The notes below the pieces were generated by a model. The model saw nothing but the letters and a program-made list of their open reading frames with translations, had not been told where the DNA came from and did not search any database. A stretch of 64,000 nucleotides of DNA, from the IMG/VR virus record IMGVR_UViG_3300043446_003193, positions 62,001-126,000 of that record. The stretch is one strand, 5' to 3'. The position numbers and the translations under genes are program-made. Each line of letters opens with the position of its first letter. Position 1 is the first letter of the stretch. Positions 45,828 to 56,254 of the stretch are shown one piece after another.

Positions 45828-46679
45828 TTAATATCCAAATCTTGCTTTTGTTACATTATAATTATTTAATATCTCTGCATCGGATAATGCTCTATTATAT
45901 ATAAAATATGTAGCAATTGCACCATTATTAAATTCACCAGGAGTGTTATCTGCTTTAGTGTGTGCACCAATTAAATATGTTTTATTTGGTTTGTTTTGTA
46001 CTCCCGATTTAGATGTACTTGTATATAGTGAACCATTTATGTACATTTTTTGTGTAGTTCCATCAAATGTTTGTGCCAAATTATACCACGTATTATATGA
46101 ATATGTAGAATGTAAATCACTATTTGATGTACCACCACCTGTTGTAATTCTTGTACTCATATATCCAATTGCAAGTCCGTTTAGATAAATTTCAACACCT
46201 TGATATACTGAACTTTCATATCCAGTACCACCTAATATCATTACTTTTTCAGAATATGTATTATTATTAAACCAAATTTGAGTTGTGGAATAATCCGTTG
46301 CAGGTGAAGAAGATAAACTCATATATCCTCCACCTAAATAAGATGCAGCAGGTGCGTATGTTCCAGTAAATTGATAATATCTAATATTACCGGAAGTTTG
46401 AATTACAGGATTTGATCCACCATTATATGAATTTGGTAATGCATAATATCCAGTATTTAATAAATTATACCAAGCACTATTATTTGCATATGTTGCATTT
46501 TTTGCATCCAAATACCAAGTCATTCCACTAGTTACTACACCGGTACCATAAAATTCACTCATTCCATCAGGTGTTGATTTTCCCATCGTATTACTTAAAG
46601 ACCTCAACGAATATGAAGGACTCCCTAATTCCGAAGCTATTTGACCGATTGATATACATCCGCTACTTTGTAATGCCAT
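45828..46679 (-). CDS. Concanavalin A/LamG-like lectin-domain virion protein
   Basis: LDAKN...WYNLAQTFDG...MYING...YNRALSDAEILNNY LamG pattern. Confidence 0.8.
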   Translation of the reverse strand: MALQSSGCISIGQIASELGSPSYSLRSLSNTMGKSTPDGMSEFYGTGVVTSGMTWYLDAKNATYANNSAWYNLLNTGYYALPNSYNGGSNPVIQTSGNIRYYQFTGTYAPAASYLGGGYMSLSSSPATDYSTTQIWFNNNTYSEKVMILGGTGYESSVYQGVEIYLNGLAIGYMSTRITTGGGTSNSDLHSTYSYNTWYNLAQTFDGTTQKMYINGSLYTSTSKSGVQNKPNKTYLIGAHTKADNTPGEFNNGAIATYFIYNRALSDAEILNNYNVTKARFGY

Positions 46680-49033
46680 TATAATCCTTTTGGTTTTTTA
46701 AGATTTTCTACTTCTATTGTAAGATTATCTATTTTAATTTGTTGTTCTTTAATTGCTTCTACCAATAATGCCGTCATATTTCCATAAGATACTCCATATC
46801 TATCTTGTTCTTTGTTATATGTTACTACTTCTGGAACTACATTTTGAACTTCTTGTGCTATGAAACCAATCTTAGTTGATTTATCTTCCAAATCAGTTCT
46901 ATTATACGAAACACCTCTCAATCTTAATACTTTATCTAATGGGTCGGTTATTGTTACTATATTTTCTTTAATTCTTCTATCGGAATATGCTACAACATCT
47001 CCAGATGCAGTTGCTGTACCACCACTACTTACACTAAATAATACTACCGTCCAAGCGTAGTCCACAACTTCAAAACTTCTAGAAGATGAACTATTACCAC
47101 CCAGTTGAACAGTCATTGTACCTTGGTTTCTATCGGATGCCCTACCTATCCACGCTTCACCTGTATTTGTTGTGCTATTTGGAAAAGTTCCCAAAGTAAT
47201 TTTTCCAGAGAATGATGAATATCCAGCACTTGTAATATTAAAAAATGCCGTATCATCTCTTCCAATTGAGTATTTATCCGTACCTTGTGCATTTGCACCT
47301 ACACCCATATCCCAATAATGATTTGCTGCACCATCCGATGCCATTCTTACTTTTGCTCCCGTATTTGTACCAGTAAATCCATTAACACCATTTGCAACAT
47401 AAGAAATGTGTGGATTTATATGCATTACCCATCTATCTTGATGACTACCATAAAGTGTTGGATATGTCGTACTACCTGCCCAACTGGCTTGAATATTTCC
47501 CAATGTTGCGGTATATGACCCACCATTTATTGCAGTTACTGCTCCAGTTGAAGTTACTGATCCAAATGTTGGACCAGAAGTTGTTAGTAATGCCTGATTG
47601 ATATATGTTCCAAATCCAGATGTAGATGATAATGTAATTTGCCCACTACCACTAACTACCGTTTCTGCATTCAATTTTGTTTTTACTCTTGCATCGGTAT
47701 AATATAAGTTGGTGTTTTCTGATAAATTTGCAGTAGTAAATCCACTTAAAGATATTTGAGATGAACCTGAAACAATTCCAGCAGGTATTGAACTTAATGA
47801 TGAATAAATAACTTGCCCACTACCACTTACAACACCGGAAGGTAATTGAGCACTTCCACTCCATACACCTGCCAAATTTGTTGCAGTTATAGTTGATGAT
47901 ACTTTTAAACTACCAGTTATTTCAGTATTTAATTTTAATCCAATAGTTGTACCATCATCATAAATTGCAGATGAAGAAATATGATCATCACCAACTGCTT
48001 TGACAATATAATTGTTAACTAATCCTAATTCGCTACCTAAAGTTTGTGATTGTGGTCCTGCTATAAATTTTGCAGATGTATATCCACTTCCACTTGGATT
48101 TTGATACAACCAGTTATTATTGGTTGAATCCCAAAGTATTGAACCAGTAAGACCGGTACTACCACTATCTATTACACTTATACCCGCATAACGAACTGCA
48201 GGATTTGCAGTATTTAGAACTACTTTATTTGTTCCAATATTAACCGAACTACCTGTAATATTTTGAATTGATGAACTTCCTTGTACAATTAAATCGGTAG
48301 TAATATATAATGAACCACTAAATACTTGAGTACCAATAAATGTGTTTGAACCCGTTGTTGCTAGCGAACCAGTTTTATTTTCTAAGTTTGTAAGACGAGT
48401 ATTTTGAGTTGTATTTAAATTATCTACCGATGCAGATGTGGTTTCTAATGCACTTAATCTTGCATTTTGAGTAGTATTTGTAGTGTCTACTGATGCCGAT
48501 TTTGTTTCTAATGCATTTATTCTAGCTGTATTTGATGATGTTATAGTTTCAATACTACCTAATCTTGCAGAAGTAGATGAAGTAAATGTATTTATTGCTC
48601 CTACCGAAACATTTACACTTGCTGATGTTGTTTGTAAAGAAGATAATACTGTATTTGTAGAAGATGTATAAGAATTAAATGATGCTGATGTTGCGTAATC
48701 ACTTACTTGTCCTACCGAAGATGATTGTGCAATATTTTGTGTTACTGATCCGGTACTGTCTACAAATGCAATAGAAGATGTGGTAATTACAACACTACCA
48801 ATTTGAATACCACCACCTGGAGCAGAACTTATTGTTGATTTTACACTACCACTATCTACAAAATTAATTGAACCGGTAGATACATAAATTTCTTTAAAGT
48901 ATTTATCAACACTTCCTAAATTACGAATGTTATTAGTATCTGGAATAATGTTACCACTTACTATTATATTTTGAAAAGAAGAACTGGCATTTACCGTTAG
49001 TGATCCGGTTATTTGAGCATCATTTATTAACAT
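46679..49033 (-). CDS. Tail fibre with C-terminal intramolecular chaperone (peptidase S74-like)
   Basis: YSDRRIKENI...GFIAQEV...LLVEAIKEQQ; shared module; no Cys seen. Confidence 0.85.
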   Translation of the reverse strand: MLINDAQITGSLTVNASSSFQNIIVSGNIIPDTNNIRNLGSVDKYFKEIYVSTGSINFVDSGSVKSTISSAPGGGIQIGSVVITTSSIAFVDSTGSVTQNIAQSSSVGQVSDYATSASFNSYTSSTNTVLSSLQTTSASVNVSVGAINTFTSSTSARLGSIETITSSNTARINALETKSASVDTTNTTQNARLSALETTSASVDNLNTTQNTRLTNLENKTGSLATTGSNTFIGTQVFSGSLYITTDLIVQGSSSIQNITGSSVNIGTNKVVLNTANPAVRYAGISVIDSGSTGLTGSILWDSTNNNWLYQNPSGSGYTSAKFIAGPQSQTLGSELGLVNNYIVKAVGDDHISSSAIYDDGTTIGLKLNTEITGSLKVSSTITATNLAGVWSGSAQLPSGVVSGSGQVIYSSLSSIPAGIVSGSSQISLSGFTTANLSENTNLYYTDARVKTKLNAETVVSGSGQITLSSTSGFGTYINQALLTTSGPTFGSVTSTGAVTAINGGSYTATLGNIQASWAGSTTYPTLYGSHQDRWVMHINPHISYVANGVNGFTGTNTGAKVRMASDGAANHYWDMGVGANAQGTDKYSIGRDDTAFFNITSAGYSSFSGKITLGTFPNSTTNTGEAWIGRASDRNQGTMTVQLGGNSSSSRSFEVVDYAWTVVLFSVSSGGTATASGDVVAYSDRRIKENIVTITDPLDKVLRLRGVSYNRTDLEDKSTKIGFIAQEVQNVVPEVVTYNKEQDRYGVSYGNMTALLVEAIKEQQIKIDNLTIEVENLKKPKGL

Positions 49034-49077
49034 CTATATTCTGTTTTTGAATATAAATATCAATTTTTACTATTAAA

Positions 49078-49830
49078 TTACTTCTTATTGTACTGGCTAA
49101 GTATCTGTCTTGCCGAACTTTCATCCATATACGGATAAAGTCTATGATATCCCAATGTACCTAATTCAAATTTTGATTCAACACTAAATTTCTTAGATAC
49201 TTCAATTGGTGCATAATTTCCGATATTATACTTAATTAATCTTAAACAAAAGAATATATCTTCTGCAAAAAATGATGCTGTTGAATATTGTCCCAATTGT
49301 ATTAGTTCTTGTAAATCTGTTTCCCATCCAAAGTTTCTGCACACATATTCCATTATTCTAGGATTTCTAATTGATAATCCACCATTTTGAATTGTTTTAT
49401 CACCAACCCAATTATAACAAGGTGCACCAATATAATCCCAATCTAAGAATTCTTCAATACCTTCTCTTAAAAGACCAGTATCGGTTTGGAATATTAAAAT
49501 TCTTTCGTATTCGTATAAATCAATCCAAAAGTTTCTATCAGTTAAGAATAGACAATAATTTAACAATGGTTTTAAATGAGGATTGTTTTTTAATAATTCA
49601 TCAAATCCTGCAATATTTTGTATTGTTTTTGGAATTGGTAAATTAGACGGATATCTTCGGAAATGAATATTATCTTCTTTTAATAACTTTCTATATTCCT
49701 TTTCAGTGCTTTCTGATGTGTAAATGATTATATCAGTATCTTTTGGTAAATACTTCATATGTTCTTTTACAATCTTATAAAATTCTGCAATCTTTCTATC
49801 TTCAATTATAACTGCTCCTAATTTTTTCAT
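49078..49830 (-). CDS. Glycosyltransferase-like protein (DUF5672-like)
   Basis: ILIFQTD...WDYIGAP...NGGLSIRN...EDIFF; start moved to ATG 49830. Confidence 0.75.
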   Translation of the reverse strand: MKKLGAVIIEDRKIAEFYKIVKEHMKYLPKDTDIIIYTSESTEKEYRKLLKEDNIHFRRYPSNLPIPKTIQNIAGFDELLKNNPHLKPLLNYCLFLTDRNFWIDLYEYERILIFQTDTGLLREGIEEFLDWDYIGAPCYNWVGDKTIQNGGLSIRNPRIMEYVCRNFGWETDLQELIQLGQYSTASFFAEDIFFCLRLIKYNIGNYAPIEVSKKFSVESKFELGTLGYHRLYPYMDESSARQILSQYNKK

Positions 49831-49832
49831 AA

Positions 49833-50540
49833 CTATATTTCGTTTTCCCAATTTGTTAAAGGTGATAACCATTTAGTTTCCCCATGTGTAGAATAGCCAG
49901 GAATAGATGATACCAATCTTCTACCTTTTTTAGTTAGGTCTCCCCACATTTGAAAATCATGTGGATATTCTCCTGCTGTCCATTGTCTTAAAACCGCTTC
50001 ATCTTCTTTTAGAGTTTTTACTTTTGCAGCAAATGTCATTGTAGTTGAATTAGTAATCTTAAAATGTGATAACTCACCACAATAAACTCTCGTAAATTCT
50101 GCTCTACCCTCACAATAAGGATTTCCACCTTCAATTGGATTTAAGTATTTATCTCTATGGTCATAAAGTGTAACATAATCCATTCCTAAATTCAAACCAT
50201 CTTCTAATACTTTTTGGGAACCGTCTTTATGTAAATAATCATCTTCTAAAAAGTAAACAATTTCATCTCCCTCTAAAACAAATACTTCCGTTTGTCCTAA
50301 TGCATGTGATAGTGCTAAATTAAATGTTCCAGCTCCATGTCCTATTTGAACTATTTGTGCTTTACCACTATAAATCTTTTCTATTTCTGATTTAAGATTT
50401 TCCGAAACACCATCCATTATAAGTAAAAAATCTTCTTGTCCGAAATGTTTAAGTGCATTTTTAAGACAATTGATTTTAGTAATATAATCGGGCTTCTCTT
50501 TTTGATATCCACCTTCTGATATTCTATAAATAACTTTCAT
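49833..50540 (-). CDS. GT-A fold (GT2-like) glycosyltransferase
   Basis: YFLEDDYLH DxD-type motif, LYDH, STHG. Confidence 0.7.
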   Translation of the reverse strand: MKVIYRISEGGYQKEKPDYITKINCLKNALKHFGQEDFLLIMDGVSENLKSEIEKIYSGKAQIVQIGHGAGTFNLALSHALGQTEVFVLEGDEIVYFLEDDYLHKDGSQKVLEDGLNLGMDYVTLYDHRDKYLNPIEGGNPYCEGRAEFTRVYCGELSHFKITNSTTMTFAAKVKTLKEDEAVLRQWTAGEYPHDFQMWGDLTKKGRRLVSSIPGYSTHGETKWLSPLTNWENEI

Positions 50541-51052
50541 TAACCTCTTTTTATAACTCTAAAACCATTATTGTTTGTTACAGTTTCACATTCTACCCAA
50601 TGAGGATTTGCTTCCATAAATTCTTCAATTGCTCTATTCATATCATTTGCCCATTCGGTATCATGAAATGCAATATATTTTCTGGCTTTATTTCCATGCA
50701 ATTCTAATTCACCCTTCATTTGGTCGTAGTTGTGTTCGGTATCTATAAACAATAAATCGGTTTCTTCTATTTGAATTTCTAATGTGCTTTTTTCTATGAA
50801 CTGAAAATCTATTCCTAATTGGTTTGTTGTATCGTAAACATCATTAATATTTTCCGATGTTCTAATATCATAACAAATTAATTTTTTAGGATTTGAACCA
50901 ACCCAACCCCAAGTTGAAACAACATCTCTAACTCCAAATTCAGTTATATGTTCACATTCTTTCCCATATTTTAACATAAGGGGAAAGTGTTCACAAATAT
51001 CACAACCGGAATTACTTAGTTCTTCTATTTTTTCAGTTACATTAATTATCAT
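50540..51052 (-). CDS. Small-molecule/glycan SAM methyltransferase (Methyltransf_24-like)
   Basis: EFGVR, DLLFIDTEH, IAFHDT. Confidence 0.75.
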   Translation of the reverse strand: MIINVTEKIEELSNSGCDICEHFPLMLKYGKECEHITEFGVRDVVSTWGWVGSNPKKLICYDIRTSENINDVYDTTNQLGIDFQFIEKSTLEIQIEETDLLFIDTEHNYDQMKGELELHGNKARKYIAFHDTEWANDMNRAIEEFMEANPHWVECETVTNNNGFRVIKRG

Positions 51053-51951
51053 TAGAACTTATTTACTTCATTGATTATTTGTGATACATCAAACATTTCG
51101 TCTTGAGAACCATAAGGACACTCGTGAAATTGTCCGTCTAATGAATAATCAAAATAAAGTGAATCAATTCTCTTTGTATTTCCAATTGGTTCTTTTGCTT
51201 CAATATTTTTGTGTATTTCGTAACCAAACATTTTAGGATGTGTTCCAATCCATAAAACTACTGATGGTAATTTGAATGCCGCTGCTGCGTGTTGTAAACA
51301 AGAATCAATTAGGACTCTTTTTGCTGAAACTTTTAATAGAGAGAACAATTCGGTATTACTCATCTGACGAGTAATTGTTTCTACTGCCGGATGATTTACT
51401 GATTGAGATTCGTGCTTACAAATTTGAATGATATGATATTGTTGTCCAAATTGTTGAACCAATGCTTCTACAACTGTTTTCGGCATGTCTCTTGTCCATG
51501 CATAGATTGGTTGTCCATCCATAATTGGGCCTCCGTTTGTATGCAATAACATAATCGGACGAGAACGCTGCCATTGTAAGTGCATTTGATTTTGTGTCAT
51601 ATTCAAATACAATTCTGGCAAATCTTCTTTCTTATTAAAAGGTAAATCATACATCTTATGCCAAGTTTCCGTTAGAGGAGTTTGTTGCATCATATGTTGT
51701 GATTCAAAATAAGGTTCTCTTCTTAAGACAATAGTATCTTTGCCATTGATATAATCATCCCAAAAATAAGGAGATACACCTAATCTATAAACTCTATGTA
51801 TGTAAGGATTGTTTAAAAATATCTCTGGGAAAGAACATACTACGATTAACTTTCTATCTGGATATTTTTTGTAAATATTTTTAAGGATTGCAGTAGATGC
51901 TACATTTTTACCTAGTCCACCTTCAACGTGGAAAATAACGAATTTGTCCAT
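51052..51951 (-). CDS. GT-B fold (GT9-like) glycosyltransferase
   Basis: GGLGKNV N-terminus; LIDSCLQHAAAAF..PSVVLW pattern of the heptosyltransferase family. Confidence 0.7.
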   Translation of the reverse strand: MDKFVIFHVEGGLGKNVASTAILKNIYKKYPDRKLIVVCSFPEIFLNNPYIHRVYRLGVSPYFWDDYINGKDTIVLRREPYFESQHMMQQTPLTETWHKMYDLPFNKKEDLPELYLNMTQNQMHLQWQRSRPIMLLHTNGGPIMDGQPIYAWTRDMPKTVVEALVQQFGQQYHIIQICKHESQSVNHPAVETITRQMSNTELFSLLKVSAKRVLIDSCLQHAAAAFKLPSVVLWIGTHPKMFGYEIHKNIEAKEPIGNTKRIDSLYFDYSLDGQFHECPYGSQDEMFDVSQIINEVNKF

Positions 51952-51978
51952 TTATAACTTTTTAATGTTTTATAGAAA

Positions 51979-52010
51979 TAAATATACGAAAAATAATTTA
52001 GAATACCAAA
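51979..52010 (-). promoter_or_regulatory. Bacteroidota-type promoter TTTG-N20-TATATTTA
   Basis: The only clear copy found inside the structural region; directly upstream of the glycosyltransferase cassette. Confidence 0.65.
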
Positions 52011-52016
52011 AATAAA

Positions 52017-52706
52017 TTATCCCTTTAAATTAGTAGATACTAAATATGATGTTCCGGTATAATACATACCACTTGACCCATCATTAAATTTAACATCTTC
52101 TAAATTATATCCGTTTGGTAAACCATTTCTATTATTCATATCACCTAACCATGTACCTAATTGATAATCTCCATTTGGTTCGGTATAAACAGTATCTCTC
52201 AACCACCATCTTCCATAATCTTTTACTTGCCAATCGGATGCACCTGTTCCATAAAAATATGGATTTCTCATTATATTACCTGTATAATCACCTGAATTTG
52301 ATGTGGATGTTCTATAAATACCAGGAACTGCTGATAAATAGGTATACCCAGTATCTCCAACTACATTGCTAAGAAAGTTTCTCATTGCTCTCCAATGATA
52401 TTTACTTCTTGGCATAATTAAATCTAATCCCAACGCAGTTCCACTATGTACTGCTGTATATGAATTTACTGATATACCACCTGTTATTACATAAAAATCA
52501 TATCCACCGCCTTCTTCTACCATGTCAACATACATTTGTAATGGATTTGGCATAAATTCAGATTGTATCCAATAATAACCAGAAGATTTGTGTGGATAAT
52601 TTCTTGCTAAATCCATACCACTTCTAGCCGGTCTGCTTGATGATGAACCATCTGCAGGTAAAGCATGTGATGAACTTATTATTAAACCTCCTACATCAAA
52701 TGGCAT
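52017..52706 (-). CDS. Fibrinogen-like (FReD-type) domain protein, paralogue A
   Basis: SGYYWI...PLQMYVDM..EGGGYDFY matches the fibrinogen-domain N-terminal motif. Confidence 0.6.
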   Translation of the reverse strand: MPFDVGGLIISSSHALPADGSSSSRPARSGMDLARNYPHKSSGYYWIQSEFMPNPLQMYVDMVEEGGGYDFYVITGGISVNSYTAVHSGTALGLDLIMPRSKYHWRAMRNFLSNVVGDTGYTYLSAVPGIYRTSTSNSGDYTGNIMRNPYFYGTGASDWQVKDYGRWWLRDTVYTEPNGDYQLGTWLGDMNNRNGLPNGYNLEDVKFNDGSSGMYYTGTSYLVSTNLKG

Positions 52707-52709
52707 ATC

Positions 52710-53456
52710 TTATCCTTTTAAATTTGTAGATAATAAATAGCTTGTACCCGTTGAATATGTACCACCATCATTAAATCCAGTCAAACTTCCATCAGAATTT
52801 AATGCGTATCCTGCTGCATATAATCCTAAAAATCCATAAGCGTATTGGTCACCATTTGGTTCACCAAATGTGGCATCTTTTAACCACCATCTGCCTAAAT
52901 CAGGTACTTTCCAATCTGGTGGTCCTGATGCGTAATAATTTGGATTTCTCATAACATATGAAGTATAGTTACCATTCATATATGCTGGATATGAGCCTGC
53001 TGCAACAGTTGATGATGTTGCGTATAATTTACCAACTATTTGCATATATCCTGATAAATTTCCTAATACATTATTTGCGTATCTATACATAGCTTTAAAA
53101 TGTCCTTGACTTCTTGGATATATTAAATCCAATCCCAGTGCAGTTCCACTATGATTTGCATTTGCATAAGATACAGCAGTTCCACCACTTATTGGATAAA
53201 AATCCCATCCACCACCATCACAATCACTATCCAAATTTACATACATTTGTAATGGATTTGGCATTTTTTCATTTTGTATCCAATAATATCCACTAGTTTT
53301 TGATGGGTAGTTTCTTTTTATATCCAATCCACTTCTAGCAGGATATGAACTAGAACTACCATCTGGTGCTAATTGTTTTGATGAATCAATAATCAATGTT
53401 CCTCCAATATCTATCGGCATAATTTTATATTTTTTTAGGTGTAGCACATTCTGCAC
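52710..53456 (-). CDS. Fibrinogen-like (FReD-type) domain protein, paralogue B
   Basis: SGYYWI...PLQMYVNL...GGGWDFY; colinear with paralogue A; true start probably MPIDIGG. Confidence 0.6.
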   Translation of the reverse strand: MQNVLHLKKYKIMPIDIGGTLIIDSSKQLAPDGSSSSYPARSGLDIKRNYPSKTSGYYWIQNEKMPNPLQMYVNLDSDCDGGGWDFYPISGGTAVSYANANHSGTALGLDLIYPRSQGHFKAMYRYANNVLGNLSGYMQIVGKLYATSSTVAAGSYPAYMNGNYTSYVMRNPNYYASGPPDWKVPDLGRWWLKDATFGEPNGDQYAYGFLGLYAAGYALNSDGSLTGFNDGGTYSTGTSYLLSTNLKG

Positions 53457-55906: not shown

Positions 55907-56254
55907 TTATGGTTTATTAGGCCAATTTATAATATCAGTTACATTTGTTATAGTTGATATTAAATCTCTTAATTCTTGTCTATAAGTTTGCCACTCCACT
56001 TTTTTTTCTTCACTTAATGGAGAATCAATGTTTTGTGTCCAATCGGATTCTGCTAATCTCTTATCTCTTTCTAATCTTACAAAATTTTTATGATTTTCTA
56101 ATATTATATTTTCTAATTCTTCAGATGTAGCCAAACTAATATCATCTGGAATAGGCATATTTAATATTATTGGATTGGCAACAAGATTATCATAATTTTT
56201 ATTGATATATTCTACTGAACCGTCTTCTTTTTCTATTTTTATAAAATCACTCAT
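55907..56254 (-). CDS. Tail fibre assembly chaperone
   Basis: RLERDKRLAESDWTQ...WQTYRQELRDL...WPNKP. Confidence 0.8.
   Translation of the reverse strand: MSDFIKIEKEDGSVEYINKNYDNLVANPIILNMPIPDDISLATSEELENIILENHKNFVRLERDKRLAESDWTQNIDSPLSEEKKVEWQTYRQELRDLISTITNVTDIINWPNKP

What the first reader, a model, noticed from the sequence alone, without database searches (positions are those of the whole stretch)
49078..52010. Four-gene glycan-building cassette with a host-type promoter inside the fibre array
Seen: GT9-like, methyltransferase, GT2-like and DUF5672-like genes are tightly coupled (two TAATG overlaps) behind their own TTTG-N20-TATATTTA promoter, flanked by very Ser/Thr-rich fibres and lectin-like genes. 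Inference: either a phage-encoded pathway that glycosylates and methylates virion fibres, or early remodelling of host LPS/capsule for superinfection exclusion. The early-type promoter fits both pre-loading of enzymes and host-surface conversion.
Basis: partly seen in the sequence, partly recalled or inferred. Interest (0 to 1): 0.65.

Follow-up and report, generated by a model that had tools for sequence, protein, structure and literature searches.

The report
Phage three-glycosyltransferase cassette beside tail fibres
An uncultivated freshwater phage carries, among its tail-fibre genes, a conserved operon of three sugar-adding enzymes plus an optional methylating enzyme; it probably decorates the phage's own fibres with a short sugar chain, but the target is not shown.

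Summary
Four tightly packed minus-strand genes (51951→49078) sit behind their own promoter, inside a Ser/Thr-rich fibre array of a 209-kb freshwater phage.

- **Gene 1** is a remote GT9 (heptosyltransferase-family) relative: hhalign 95%, E 3e-8, against E. coli WaaC/F/Q/U.
- **Gene 2** is a CmcI/Methyltransf_24-like methyltransferase.
- **Gene 3** is a GT-A glycosyltransferase with an invariant ExD motif. The model has pLDDT 97 and Z 15 to GnT-I/POMGnT1. The family has no Pfam model.
- **Gene 4** is DUF5672, which folds like retaining GT-A enzymes (GT8, GT6, GT15; Z 14).

The conserved unit in about 25 related contigs is the three glycosyltransferases. The methyltransferase is an accessory insert, cleanly absent in contigs from four other metagenomes.

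The promoter belongs to a 20-member family (TTGGTA-N17-TATATT) that otherwise precedes replication and metabolic genes. It also carries 9 of 10 bases of the late box TATATTTATA. Half of the relatives keep only that late box, so "early-type" is only partly right.

In relatives the cassette always lies between fibre genes and the tail-sheath module. All four enzymes lack hydrophobic segments, and the genome has no hydroxymethylase. Virion (fibre) glycosylation is the best reading (about 0.45). Host-surface remodelling remains open.

The parts
51979..52010 (-). Cassette promoter: TTTGGTA (-33/-35-like), 17-nt spacer, then TATATTTATT (-7/-10-like). The second element matches 9 of 10 bases of the late box TATATTTATA.
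   Evidence: Sequence. One of 20 equally spaced TTGG-N19-TATATT sites, all on the coding strand. A promoter is conserved upstream of the first gene in relatives, either in this form or as the late box alone.
51052..51951 (-). GT9-like glycosyltransferase (299 aa). A remote relative of ADP-heptose:LPS heptosyltransferases, presumably GT-B fold.
   Evidence: hhalign against E. coli WaaC/F/Q/U: probability 95%, E 3.4e-8, 225 columns. The control against GT4 WaaG/WaaB gave 0.15%. TIGR02193 E 3.6e-4. Pfam GT9 reached only 14.8 bits against a cut-off of 22. 9 of 30 nearest atlas clusters carry PF01075. Invariant D216-S217...H221...A225 aligns with the WaaC DTGLSHLTAA motif.
50540..51052 (-). Accessory SAM-methyltransferase-like gene (170 aa), of the Methyltransf_24 / rhamnosyl-O-methyltransferase-CmcI type.
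   Evidence: 13 of 18 homologues hit Methyltransf_24 and 9 of 18 hit RMNT_CmcI (best E 5e-5). The family profile hits the genome's own bona fide Methyltransf_24 protein. The gene is present only in the window and L006 among related loci. Contigs in four runs skip exactly 50540-51051/2.
49833..50540 (-). GT-A fold glycosyltransferase (235 aa) with E99-D100-D101 (E99 and D101 invariant). Belongs to a large family without a Pfam model.
   Evidence: AF2 pLDDT 97. Foldseek/VIA: GnT-I and POMGnT1 (GT13) at Z 15, rmsd 3.0, 186 residues aligned; also LH3, WrtF and GalNAc-T2. E99 and D101 are invariant. 1075 cluster representatives, with fusions to DUF5672, GT1, GT2, TOD1/MUCI70 and FkbM.
49078..49830 (-). 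DUF5672 protein (250 aa). GT-A fold resembling retaining glycosyltransferases.
   Evidence: PF18922 E 1.7e-25, 90 bits. AF2 pLDDT 89. VIA: LARGE1 GT8 domain Z 14.2; Kre2p, XXYLT1 and LgtC Z 13.3-13.5; glycogenin and GT6 Z about 12.5. BFVD: DUF5672 domains in multi-domain glycosyltransferases of giant viruses.
49052..49061 (-). GATATTTATA, a 9-of-10 match to the late box, 16 nt upstream of the ATG of the next fibre gene.
   Evidence: Sequence, compared with the late-box family. This is a weak single site.
46679..49033 (-). Downstream tail fibre (784 aa, 27% Ser+Thr) with a C-terminal Peptidase_S74 chaperone. Candidate acceptor (context only).
   Evidence: Pfam and PHROGs; composition.
52017..53456 (-). 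Two paralogous virion structural proteins (229 and 248 aa) directly upstream of the cassette (context only).
   Evidence: phrog_15727 'virion structural protein', E about 1e-65 for each.

Best explanation
**What it is.** The locus is a conserved phage operon of three soluble glycosyltransferases:
- a GT9-like, presumably GT-B, enzyme;
- a GT-A enzyme with a DxD-type (E-D-D) motif, structurally closest to inverting GT13;
- a DUF5672 GT-A enzyme that resembles retaining GT8/GT6 enzymes.

In this strain a small SAM-dependent O-methyltransferase-like gene has been inserted between the first two.

**How it most likely works (inferred).** The enzymes use host nucleotide sugars in the cytoplasm. Each adds one residue, building a short glycan of up to three sugars, methyl-capped in this strain. 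The acceptor is most likely Ser/Thr of the phage's own virion proteins, probably the neighbouring tail fibres, before assembly.

**Expression.** The cassette has its own promoter, which combines a host-type -33/-7 pair with the phage's late box. It can therefore be transcribed from early on and through the late period, when the fibres are made.

**Shown versus inferred.** Shown here: enzyme classes, operon structure, conservation, the variable methyltransferase and the promoter family. Inferred: acceptor, sugars, order of action and timing.
For: **Enzyme identities:**

**Same pathway:** the gene-3 domain is fused to DUF5672 in 3 of 10 longer homologues. In the others it is fused to GT1, GT2, TOD1/MUCI70 or FkbM methyltransferase domains.

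**Conserved position in the virion module:**
- About 25 related contigs carry GT9-like, GT-A and DUF5672 genes in the same order.
- Where the flanks are visible, the cassette lies between fibre genes and the p152 / tail-sheath / tube module.
- A distant GT9-like homologue directly follows the tail-fibre gene in the unrelated Pelagibacter phage HTVC111P.

**Promoter:** a late-box core precedes the cassette in nearly all relatives. In this genome that box precedes the sheath, fibre, adaptor and endolysin genes.

**Soluble enzymes:** none of the four proteins has a hydrophobic segment, so they are soluble rather than Gtr-like membrane enzymes.

**DNA target unlikely:** the genome has no thymidylate-synthase-type hydroxymethylase, so there is no hydroxymethyl base to glycosylate.

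**Candidate acceptors:** the flanking fibres have 23-34% Ser+Thr.

**Precedents:**
- GT-B heptosyltransferases related to WaaC O-heptosylate serines of repeat adhesins (PMC4358343).
- Phage-encoded glycosyltransferases glycosylate mycobacteriophage capsid and tail proteins (Freeman 2023, as cited in PMC12619734).
Against: - No experiment or read data bears on the acceptor, and no RNA run holds the locus.
- In this phage the promoter has the -33 element that otherwise marks replication and metabolic genes. That fits an early, host-directed role equally well.
- GT9 enzymes classically act on the LPS inner core.
- Homologues at about 40% identity in marine phages sit among tailoring enzymes (carbamoyltransferase, 2OG oxygenase) rather than beside fibres. 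In Microcystis phage Mel-JY01 the GT-A homologue lies in a non-structural GT/MT cluster.
- Fibre regions are hot spots for accessory genes, so position alone is weak evidence.
- The genome has a second, larger glycan locus elsewhere.
- The GT9-like and methyltransferase folds were not modelled.
Confidence: 0.45

Rival explanations
1. Host-envelope remodelling. The enzymes extend or cap the host's LPS core or another surface glycan soon after infection. This would block superinfection or stop progeny from sticking to debris.
For: - The host-type -33/-7 promoter is shared with replication and auxiliary-metabolism genes.
- The first gene has GT9 ancestry, and sources name it 'ADP-heptose:LPS heptosyltransferase'.
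- GT9 is present in Bacteroides thetaiotaomicron among the control genomes.
- LPS-core glycosyltransferases are soluble or peripheral cytoplasmic enzymes, so the absence of membrane segments does not exclude this reading.
Against: - In half of the relatives only the late box is present. Late expression is too late for surface conversion in a lytic cycle.
- The position inside the virion module is conserved.
- There is no flippase, ligase or bactoprenol-linked enzyme, and the proteins have no membrane segment.
- The phage has another, promoter-less glycan operon downstream of early genes that would suit this role better.
Confidence: 0.25
2. An accessory (moron-like) glycan-tailoring module with another acceptor. 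Candidates are a capsid or sheath protein, a small molecule, or a glycoconjugate made together with the second glycan locus at genome 50-60 kb. On this reading its place beside the fibres is incidental.
For: - The slot between the first and second glycosyltransferase genes is variable: a methyltransferase, a 291-aa unknown ORF, or nothing. Gene 3 has been lost in L005/L029.
- Distant homologues lie in tailoring clusters away from fibres.
- The second locus holds three GT2 genes, a Methyltransf_24 gene and a HAD/NTP-transferase gene.
Against: Order and position hold across relatives down to about 50% identity, and the cassette has its own promoter. That argues for a stable role tied to the structural module.
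Confidence: 0.2
3. DNA hypermodification. The glycosyltransferases glycosylate modified bases in phage DNA, as in T-even phages.
For: The promoter carries the -33 element typical of early genes in this genome, as with T4 DNA glucosyltransferases. Phage DNA glycosylation by diverse glycosyltransferases is known (Pyle 2024, as cited in PMC12619734).
Against: - A search for PF00303 (dCMP/dUMP hydroxymethylase family) found nothing in a genome rated 100% complete.
- The cassette lies in the structural module.
- The known T4 enzymes belong to other families (own knowledge).
Confidence: 0.04

Closest known systems
Mycobacteriophage virion glycosylation operons (Freeman et al. 2023, Cell Host Microbe; cited in PMC12619734)
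   Same: Phage-encoded soluble glycosyltransferases sit next to structural genes and are proposed or shown to decorate virion proteins in the cytoplasm.
   Different: - The host phylum differs (Bacteroidota inferred here).
- The enzyme families differ (GT9-like, GT13-like and DUF5672).
- The neighbours here are fibres, not capsid or tail tube.
- No glycan has been demonstrated here.
LPS heptosyltransferases WaaC/WaaF/WaaQ (CAZy GT9, PF01075)
   Same: There is profile-level homology over about 225 columns, and the C-terminal D-S/T-x-x-x-H-x-A-A nucleotide-sugar motif is kept.
   Different: The window protein is below Pfam's threshold. It is 299 aa rather than 320-350 aa, is phage-encoded, and its donor and acceptor are unknown.
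Bacterial autotransporter heptosyltransferases TibC/AAH (PMC4358343)
   Same: They show that a WaaC-like GT-B enzyme can O-glycosylate serines of repetitive Ser-rich fibrous proteins in the cytoplasm. This is the mechanism proposed here for gene 1.
   Different: TibC has an iron-finger and forms dodecamers. Neither feature was tested, and no specific sequence similarity to TibC was shown.
Chlorovirus and giant-virus multi-domain glycosyltransferases (own knowledge: PBCV-1 A064R carries two rhamnosyltransferase domains plus a methyltransferase domain)
   Same: The logic is the same: several glycosyltransferase modules plus an O-methyl-capping module that build a virion glycan. DUF5672 domains occur in giant-virus multi-domain glycosyltransferases.
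   Different: Here the modules are separate genes in a bacteriophage, and homology to A064R was not tested.
Serotype-converting Gtr clusters of temperate phages
   Same: They are phage genes that alter a glycan and are linked to superinfection exclusion.
   Different: Gtr systems use membrane proteins (GtrA, GtrB, GtrC) and bactoprenol. None of the four proteins here has a hydrophobic segment, and the phage looks lytic.

Membership tests
CAZy GT9 / Pfam PF01075 (gene 1) | Score above the curated family threshold | tested here: not met
   14.8 bits against a cut-off of 22. 15.5 bits in the six-frame search. Only 2 of 20 homologues reach E<0.1.
CAZy GT9 / Pfam PF01075 (gene 1) | Homology to bona fide heptosyltransferases across both halves, specific relative to other GT-B families | tested here: met
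   hhalign probability 95%, E 3.4e-8, 225 columns against WaaC/F/Q/U. The control against GT4 WaaG/WaaB gave 0.15%.
CAZy GT9 / Pfam PF01075 (gene 1) | C-terminal nucleotide-sugar motif D-(S/T)-G-x-x-H-x-A-A-A | tested here: met
   IDSCLQHAAAA, with D216, S217, H221 and A225 invariant. It aligns to VDTGLSHLTAA of WaaC.
CAZy GT9 / Pfam PF01075 (gene 1) | GT-B fold; ADP-heptose as donor | not tested
The donor cannot be read from the sequence.
GT-A glycosyltransferases (gene 3) | GT-A Rossmann-like fold | tested here: met
   pLDDT 97. Z 15.0, rmsd 3.0 and 186 residues aligned to GnT-I. Foldseek probability 1.0.
GT-A glycosyltransferases (gene 3) | DxD metal/nucleotide motif after strand beta-4 | tested here: met
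   E99-D100-D101 lies at the end of strand 94-99. E99 and D101 are invariant in 55 sequences.
Pfam GT2 families PF00535 / PF10111 (gene 3) | Score above the curated family threshold | tested here: not met
   PF10111 scored 14.6 bits against a cut-off of 27.3. Fused relatives reach only about 23 bits on PF00535. The profile against PDB gave GT2 enzymes at E about 0.01.
Methyltransf_24 / RMNT_CmcI class I methyltransferases (gene 2) | Family HMM match | tested here: inconclusive
   The window protein scored 16.9 bits against a cut-off of 26.3. 13 of 18 homologues match Methyltransf_24 and 9 of 18 match RMNT_CmcI, all below the cut-off (best E 5e-5).
Methyltransf_24 / RMNT_CmcI class I methyltransferases (gene 2) | SAM-binding motif I, the acidic residue after beta-2, and the D..H / H-D metal motifs | tested here: inconclusive
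   Invariant E38-x-G40, D62, D104-T-x-H107 and H130-D131 are present. Their assignment to these motifs is by eye, and the fold was not modelled.
Pfam DUF5672 (gene 4) | Score above the curated family threshold | tested here: met
   90 bits against a cut-off of 24.4.
Retaining GT-A enzymes, GT8-like (gene 4) | Fold similarity and the DxD motif | tested here: inconclusive
   The fold is met: Z 14.2 to LARGE1 and 13.3 to LgtC. Only one Asp (D117, D-T/S-G/A) is invariant at the DxD position.
Phage virion glycosylation system | Glycan covalently attached to virion proteins and dependent on the phage glycosyltransferases | not testable with these tools
   Only context is available.
Gtr-type serotype conversion | Membrane flippase, bactoprenol glycosyltransferase and membrane glycosyltransferase | tested here: not met
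   None of the four proteins has a hydrophobic stretch of 15 residues or more.
T-even-type DNA glycosylation | Hydroxymethyl-pyrimidine pathway in the same genome | tested here: not met
   PF00303 is absent from the 209-kb genome rated 100% complete, while the controls ring in 10 of 14 genomes.

The most novel reading that the evidence does not exclude
An abundant lineage of freshwater Bacteroidota myophages O-glycosylates its large tail-fibre repertoire. It does so with a dedicated trio of enzymes: a GT9-like initiator, an inverting GT-A enzyme and a retaining DUF5672 enzyme. Strains switch glycan tailoring on or off (methyl cap, other inserts) by gaining or losing genes in a fixed slot. The result would be a variable virion 'serotype' that tunes adsorption or shields fibres from host defences or proteases. 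This would also give DUF5672, and the unnamed GT-A family, their first assigned function.
Probability: 0.3. Interest if true: 0.7.

Novelty: new variant of a known kind. Interest (0 to 1): 0.45.

Why it matters
**Why it would matter if true**
- Virion glycosylation by phage-encoded enzymes has been demonstrated mainly in mycobacteriophages. A conserved fibre-side glycosyltransferase module in very abundant freshwater phages would extend it to phages of Gram-negative Bacteroidota. Each protein has thousands of metagenomic homologues.
- It would bear directly on host recognition, since the neighbours are receptor-binding fibres.

**Concrete annotations delivered now**
- DUF5672 is assigned a retaining-type GT-A fold.
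- A large GT-A family that lacks a Pfam model is recognised.
- Two promoter classes are defined for this phage.

**If the host-surface reading is right instead,** the cassette would be an example of LPS editing by a lytic phage.

Tried and rejected
- **DNA search.** blastn of the locus against 50,697 phage records found no match.
- **Single sequences against PDB.** Nothing useful.
- **GT9-like profiles against PDB.** No hit. Pfam voting over homologues was weak, 2 of 20. Only profile-profile comparison resolved this gene.
- **Methyltransferase profile against PDB.** No meaningful hit.
- **Generic sigma-70 and terminator scan.** At or below chance, with no minus-strand terminator. Read-through from upstream fibre genes therefore cannot be excluded.
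- **DUF5672 scan of 185,579 prokaryote genomes by peptide patterns.** No relative found; the scan is limited by its patterns.
- **Relatives of a virus record.** These cannot be drawn.
- **"Moraphage" identity (PMC12619734).** Rejected, because the genome has no HSP70.
- **DNA glycosylation.** Rejected for lack of PF00303.
- **Nucleotide-sugar genes.** There is no NAD-dependent epimerase/dehydratase gene. One HAD/NTP-transferase fusion lies outside the cassette.
- **Contexts of GT-A/DUF5672 fusion proteins.** The contigs were too short to inform.
- **Cluster look-up.** It gave no organism names.
- **RNA evidence.** No RNA run holds the locus, so expression and timing rest on promoter motifs alone.
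Full report
**Setting**

The window is bases 62001-126000 of a 209,443-bp IMG/VR virus record rated 100% complete. GC content is about 31%. Every gene lies on the minus strand.

The tail sheath is closest to Microcystis phage Mel-JY01 (46%) and Flavobacterium phage immuto (41%). The DNA occurs in freshwater metagenomes from at least 12 studies.

Start codons are not preceded by Shine-Dalgarno motifs (8% against a 10% background). They are preceded by adenines at -13 to -11 (64-74%) and at -3 (62%). This is the Bacteroidota pattern described for Flavobacterium johnsoniae (PMC6847099). A Bacteroidota host is therefore inferred, not shown.

**The observation**

Four minus-strand ORFs run from 51951 to 49078: 299, 170, 235 and 250 aa.
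- The first two junctions are TAATG overlaps.
- The third junction is TAG-TT-ATG.
- The fourth gene starts at 49830 (MKKL...), as in the relatives, not at the overlapping ATG at 49872.

TTTG-N20-TATATTTA sits 29 nt upstream of the first ATG.

**What the proteins are**

*Gene 4* is a clear DUF5672 member (PF18922, 90 bits).
- Its AF2 model (pLDDT 89) is a GT-A fold.
- It is closest to retaining glycosyltransferases: the LARGE1 GT8 domain (Z 14.2, rmsd 3.8, 213 residues), Kre2p, XXYLT1 and LgtC (Z 13.3-13.5), and GT6 enzymes and glycogenin (Z about 12.5).
- Among viral models it matches DUF5672 domains inside multi-domain glycosyltransferases of giant viruses.
- Only one Asp (D117) is invariant where GT-A enzymes carry DxD.

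*Gene 3* has no Pfam family but belongs to a large family: 4438 word-search hits and 1075 cluster representatives.
- Its model (pLDDT 97) is GT-A.
- It is nearest GnT-I and POMGnT1 (GT13; Z 15.0, rmsd 3.0, 186 residues), then WrtF, the LH3 glycosyltransferase domain and GalNAc-T2.
- E99-D100-D101 lies at the DxD position, and E99 and D101 are invariant.
- A profile search of PDB gives only weak GT2 hits: SunS, TarS and SpsA, E about 0.01.
- Longer homologues fuse this domain to DUF5672 (3 of 10), or to GT1, GT2, TOD1/MUCI70, DUF6492 or an FkbM methyltransferase. These fusions tie genes 3 and 4 to one glycan pathway.

*Gene 1* is below threshold for GT9 (14.8 bits against 22; TIGR02193 E 3.6e-4), and its profiles find nothing in PDB.
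- A profile-profile comparison with E. coli WaaC, WaaF, WaaQ and WaaU gives probability 95%, E 3.4e-8, over 225 columns.
- The control against GT4 enzymes WaaG and WaaB gives 0.15%.
- The invariant IDSCLQHAAAA aligns with the WaaC nucleotide-sugar motif.
- 9 of the 30 nearest atlas clusters carry PF01075.
- It is therefore a remote GT9-family relative. Its fold was not modelled.

*Gene 2* is sub-threshold for Methyltransf_24.
- 13 of 18 homologues hit Methyltransf_24 and 9 of 18 hit RMNT_CmcI (rhamnosyl O-methyltransferase/CmcI).
- The family profile also finds the genome's own bona fide Methyltransf_24 protein.

None of the four proteins has a hydrophobic segment.

**Conservation and the variable slot**

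About 25 IMG/VR contigs carry GT9-like, GT-A and DUF5672 genes in this order, at 51-94% identity.
- The methyltransferase is present only in the window and, at 36% identity, in L006.
- L015 has an unrelated 291-aa ORF in the same slot.
- L005/L029 lack gene 3.

Contigs from four runs of four other studies join 50540 directly to 51051/51052, which removes exactly the methyltransferase ORF. Depth is lowest over that gene. The conserved unit is therefore three glycosyltransferases, and the methyltransferase is a strain-level insert.

**Position**

In the relatives the cassette lies between fibre gene(s) with Peptidase_S74 ends and a module of small ORF, p152, small ORF, tail sheath and tube.

In this phage and its nearest kin (L003, L004), additional fibre genes separate the cassette from that module, so it lies inside the array. 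The array of Ser/Thr-rich proteins (21-34% Ser+Thr; genome mean 14%) spans about 46 kb.

A distant GT9-like homologue directly follows the tail-fibre gene of Pelagibacter phage HTVC111P.

Other contexts point the other way:
- The 40%-identity homologues in marine phages sit with a glycosyltransferase, a 2OG oxygenase, phrog_27463 and a NodU-like carbamoyltransferase.
- The Mel-JY01 homologue of gene 3 lies in an eight-gene GT/MT cluster beside GuaB.

**Promoter**

Two motif families are strongly strand-biased in this genome.

| Class | Motif | Coding strand | Other strand | Shuffles |
|---|---|---|---|---|
| A | TTGG-N18-20-TATATT | 27 sites | 3 | about 2.5 |
| B | TATATTTATA | 21 sites | 0 | about 3.2 |

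*Class A.* Twenty sites have identical spacing.
- Their sequence, aTTTGGtaat...TATATTt, fits the Bacteroidota -33/-7 TTTG/TAnnTTTG type (PMC6847099), though the final G is often missing.
- The annotated genes downstream are an exonuclease, an SSB, an endonuclease, CobS/T-like proteins, a NifU-like protein and a phosphohydrolase.

*Class B.* These sites lie 12-56 nt (one 96 nt) before start codons and have no -33 element.
- They precede the tail sheath, a 1224-aa fibre, an adaptor-like protein and the endolysin.
- Calling A "early/middle" and B "late" is an inference from these gene functions.

*The cassette promoter* is class A, but its second element, TATATTTATT, is also 9 of 10 bases of class B.
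- Upstream of the first gene, nine related loci (eight distinct contigs) have class A.
- Eight relatives have only the late box.
- The four most distant loci have neither.

The conserved feature is therefore the late-type core, and this phage adds a -33 element. No terminator flanks the cassette. The next fibre gene has GATATTTATA 16 nt before its ATG.

**Interpretation**

The enzyme content predicts stepwise addition of up to three sugars by three mechanistically different transferases, with optional O-methyl capping.

Several observations favour glycosylation of virion proteins, most plausibly the fibres, in the cytoplasm:
- the enzymes are soluble;
- the place in the virion module is conserved;
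- the late-box core is conserved;
- the neighbours are Ser/Thr-rich;
- the GT9-like family is independently linked to a tail fibre in HTVC111P;
- there is no hydroxymethylase.

Precedents exist. WaaC-like heptosyltransferases O-glycosylate serines of repeat adhesins (PMC4358343). Phage glycosyltransferases decorate mycobacteriophage virions (cited in PMC12619734).

Host-surface remodelling remains a serious rival, because of the -33 element and the GT9 ancestry. DNA glycosylation is unlikely. No data here identify the acceptor, the sugars or the order of action.

**Second glycan locus**

Just upstream of the window (genome about 50.4-60.5 kb) lies a tightly packed run of about 13 genes. It includes:
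- three bona fide GT2 genes;
- a weak GT1-like gene;
- a true Methyltransf_24 gene;
- a HAD_2/NTP-transferase fusion, which could make a nucleotide sugar.

It has no clear internal promoter of either class: one irregularly spaced class-A-like match lies inside an ORF, and a late box sits at its downstream end. It may supply donors, or it may serve a different target.

**Verdict**

The locus is a new variant of a known kind: a phage glycosyltransferase cassette associated with structural genes. Interest is moderate.

Noticed in passing
L068:1921-11978 (genome 50,420-60,477; just upstream of the window start): A second, larger glycan locus of about 13 tightly packed genes. It holds three bona fide GT2 genes (PF00535 E 1e-18, 1e-11 and 6e-10), a weak GT1-like gene, a Methyltransf_24 gene (E 1e-12), a HAD_2 + NTP_transferase fusion (456 aa) and several unknowns. 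It has no clear internal promoter of either class.
   Followed up: partly
window 1162, 8205, 20240, 21579, 52009 (first base, minus strand); 15 more sites in the rest of the genome: A promoter family TTGGTA-N17-TATATT (Bacteroidota-like -33/-7). It has 20 equally spaced sites, all on the coding strand, in front of exonuclease, SSB, endonuclease, NifU-like, CobS/T-like and phosphohydrolase genes.
   Followed up: yes
window 20217, 24102, 33012, 36981, 37552 (minus strand); 16 more genome-wide: A late-type box, TATATTTATA, reminiscent of the T4 late promoter TATAAATA. It has 21 sites on the coding strand and none on the other, mostly 12-56 nt before start codons. It precedes the tail sheath, a fibre, an adaptor-like protein and the endolysin.
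   Followed up: yes
whole genome (window 1-64000 included): All genes of the 209-kb genome are on one strand. There is no Shine-Dalgarno signal (8% against a 10% background). Adenines are enriched at -13 to -11 (up to 74%) and at -3 (62%). This is the Bacteroidota translation-initiation pattern and points to a Flavobacteriia-like freshwater host.
   Followed up: partly
window 37591-64000 and on to genome 145,649: A fibre array of about 46 kb with some 15 or more large Ser/Thr-rich proteins (21-34% Ser+Thr). Several of them share a conserved N-terminal/shaft segment at 45-75% identity, and some end in Peptidase_S74 chaperone domains.
   Followed up: partly
window 52017-52706 and 52710-53456: A tandem paralogue pair of phrog_15727 'virion structural protein', with sub-threshold hits to the fibrillar collagen C-terminal domain (COLFI). 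Their role is unknown.
   Followed up: no
window 55907-56254: A small protein with a Phage_tail_APC (tail assembly chaperone) domain (E 1.5e-17) sits between two fibre genes.
   Followed up: no
L015:4426-5301: In one relative, the slot that holds the methyltransferase here is occupied by an unrelated 291-aa ORF with no detected similarity to any protein of this genome. This suggests a swappable tailoring position.
   Followed up: no
L002:6699-7625 and L010:5292-6110: In marine phages, the 40%-identity GT9-like homologue is always adjacent to a phrog_27463 protein of unknown function. In AG-345-L05 it is also next to a NodU-like carbamoyltransferase, a 2OG-Fe(II) oxygenase and another glycosyltransferase.
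   Followed up: partly
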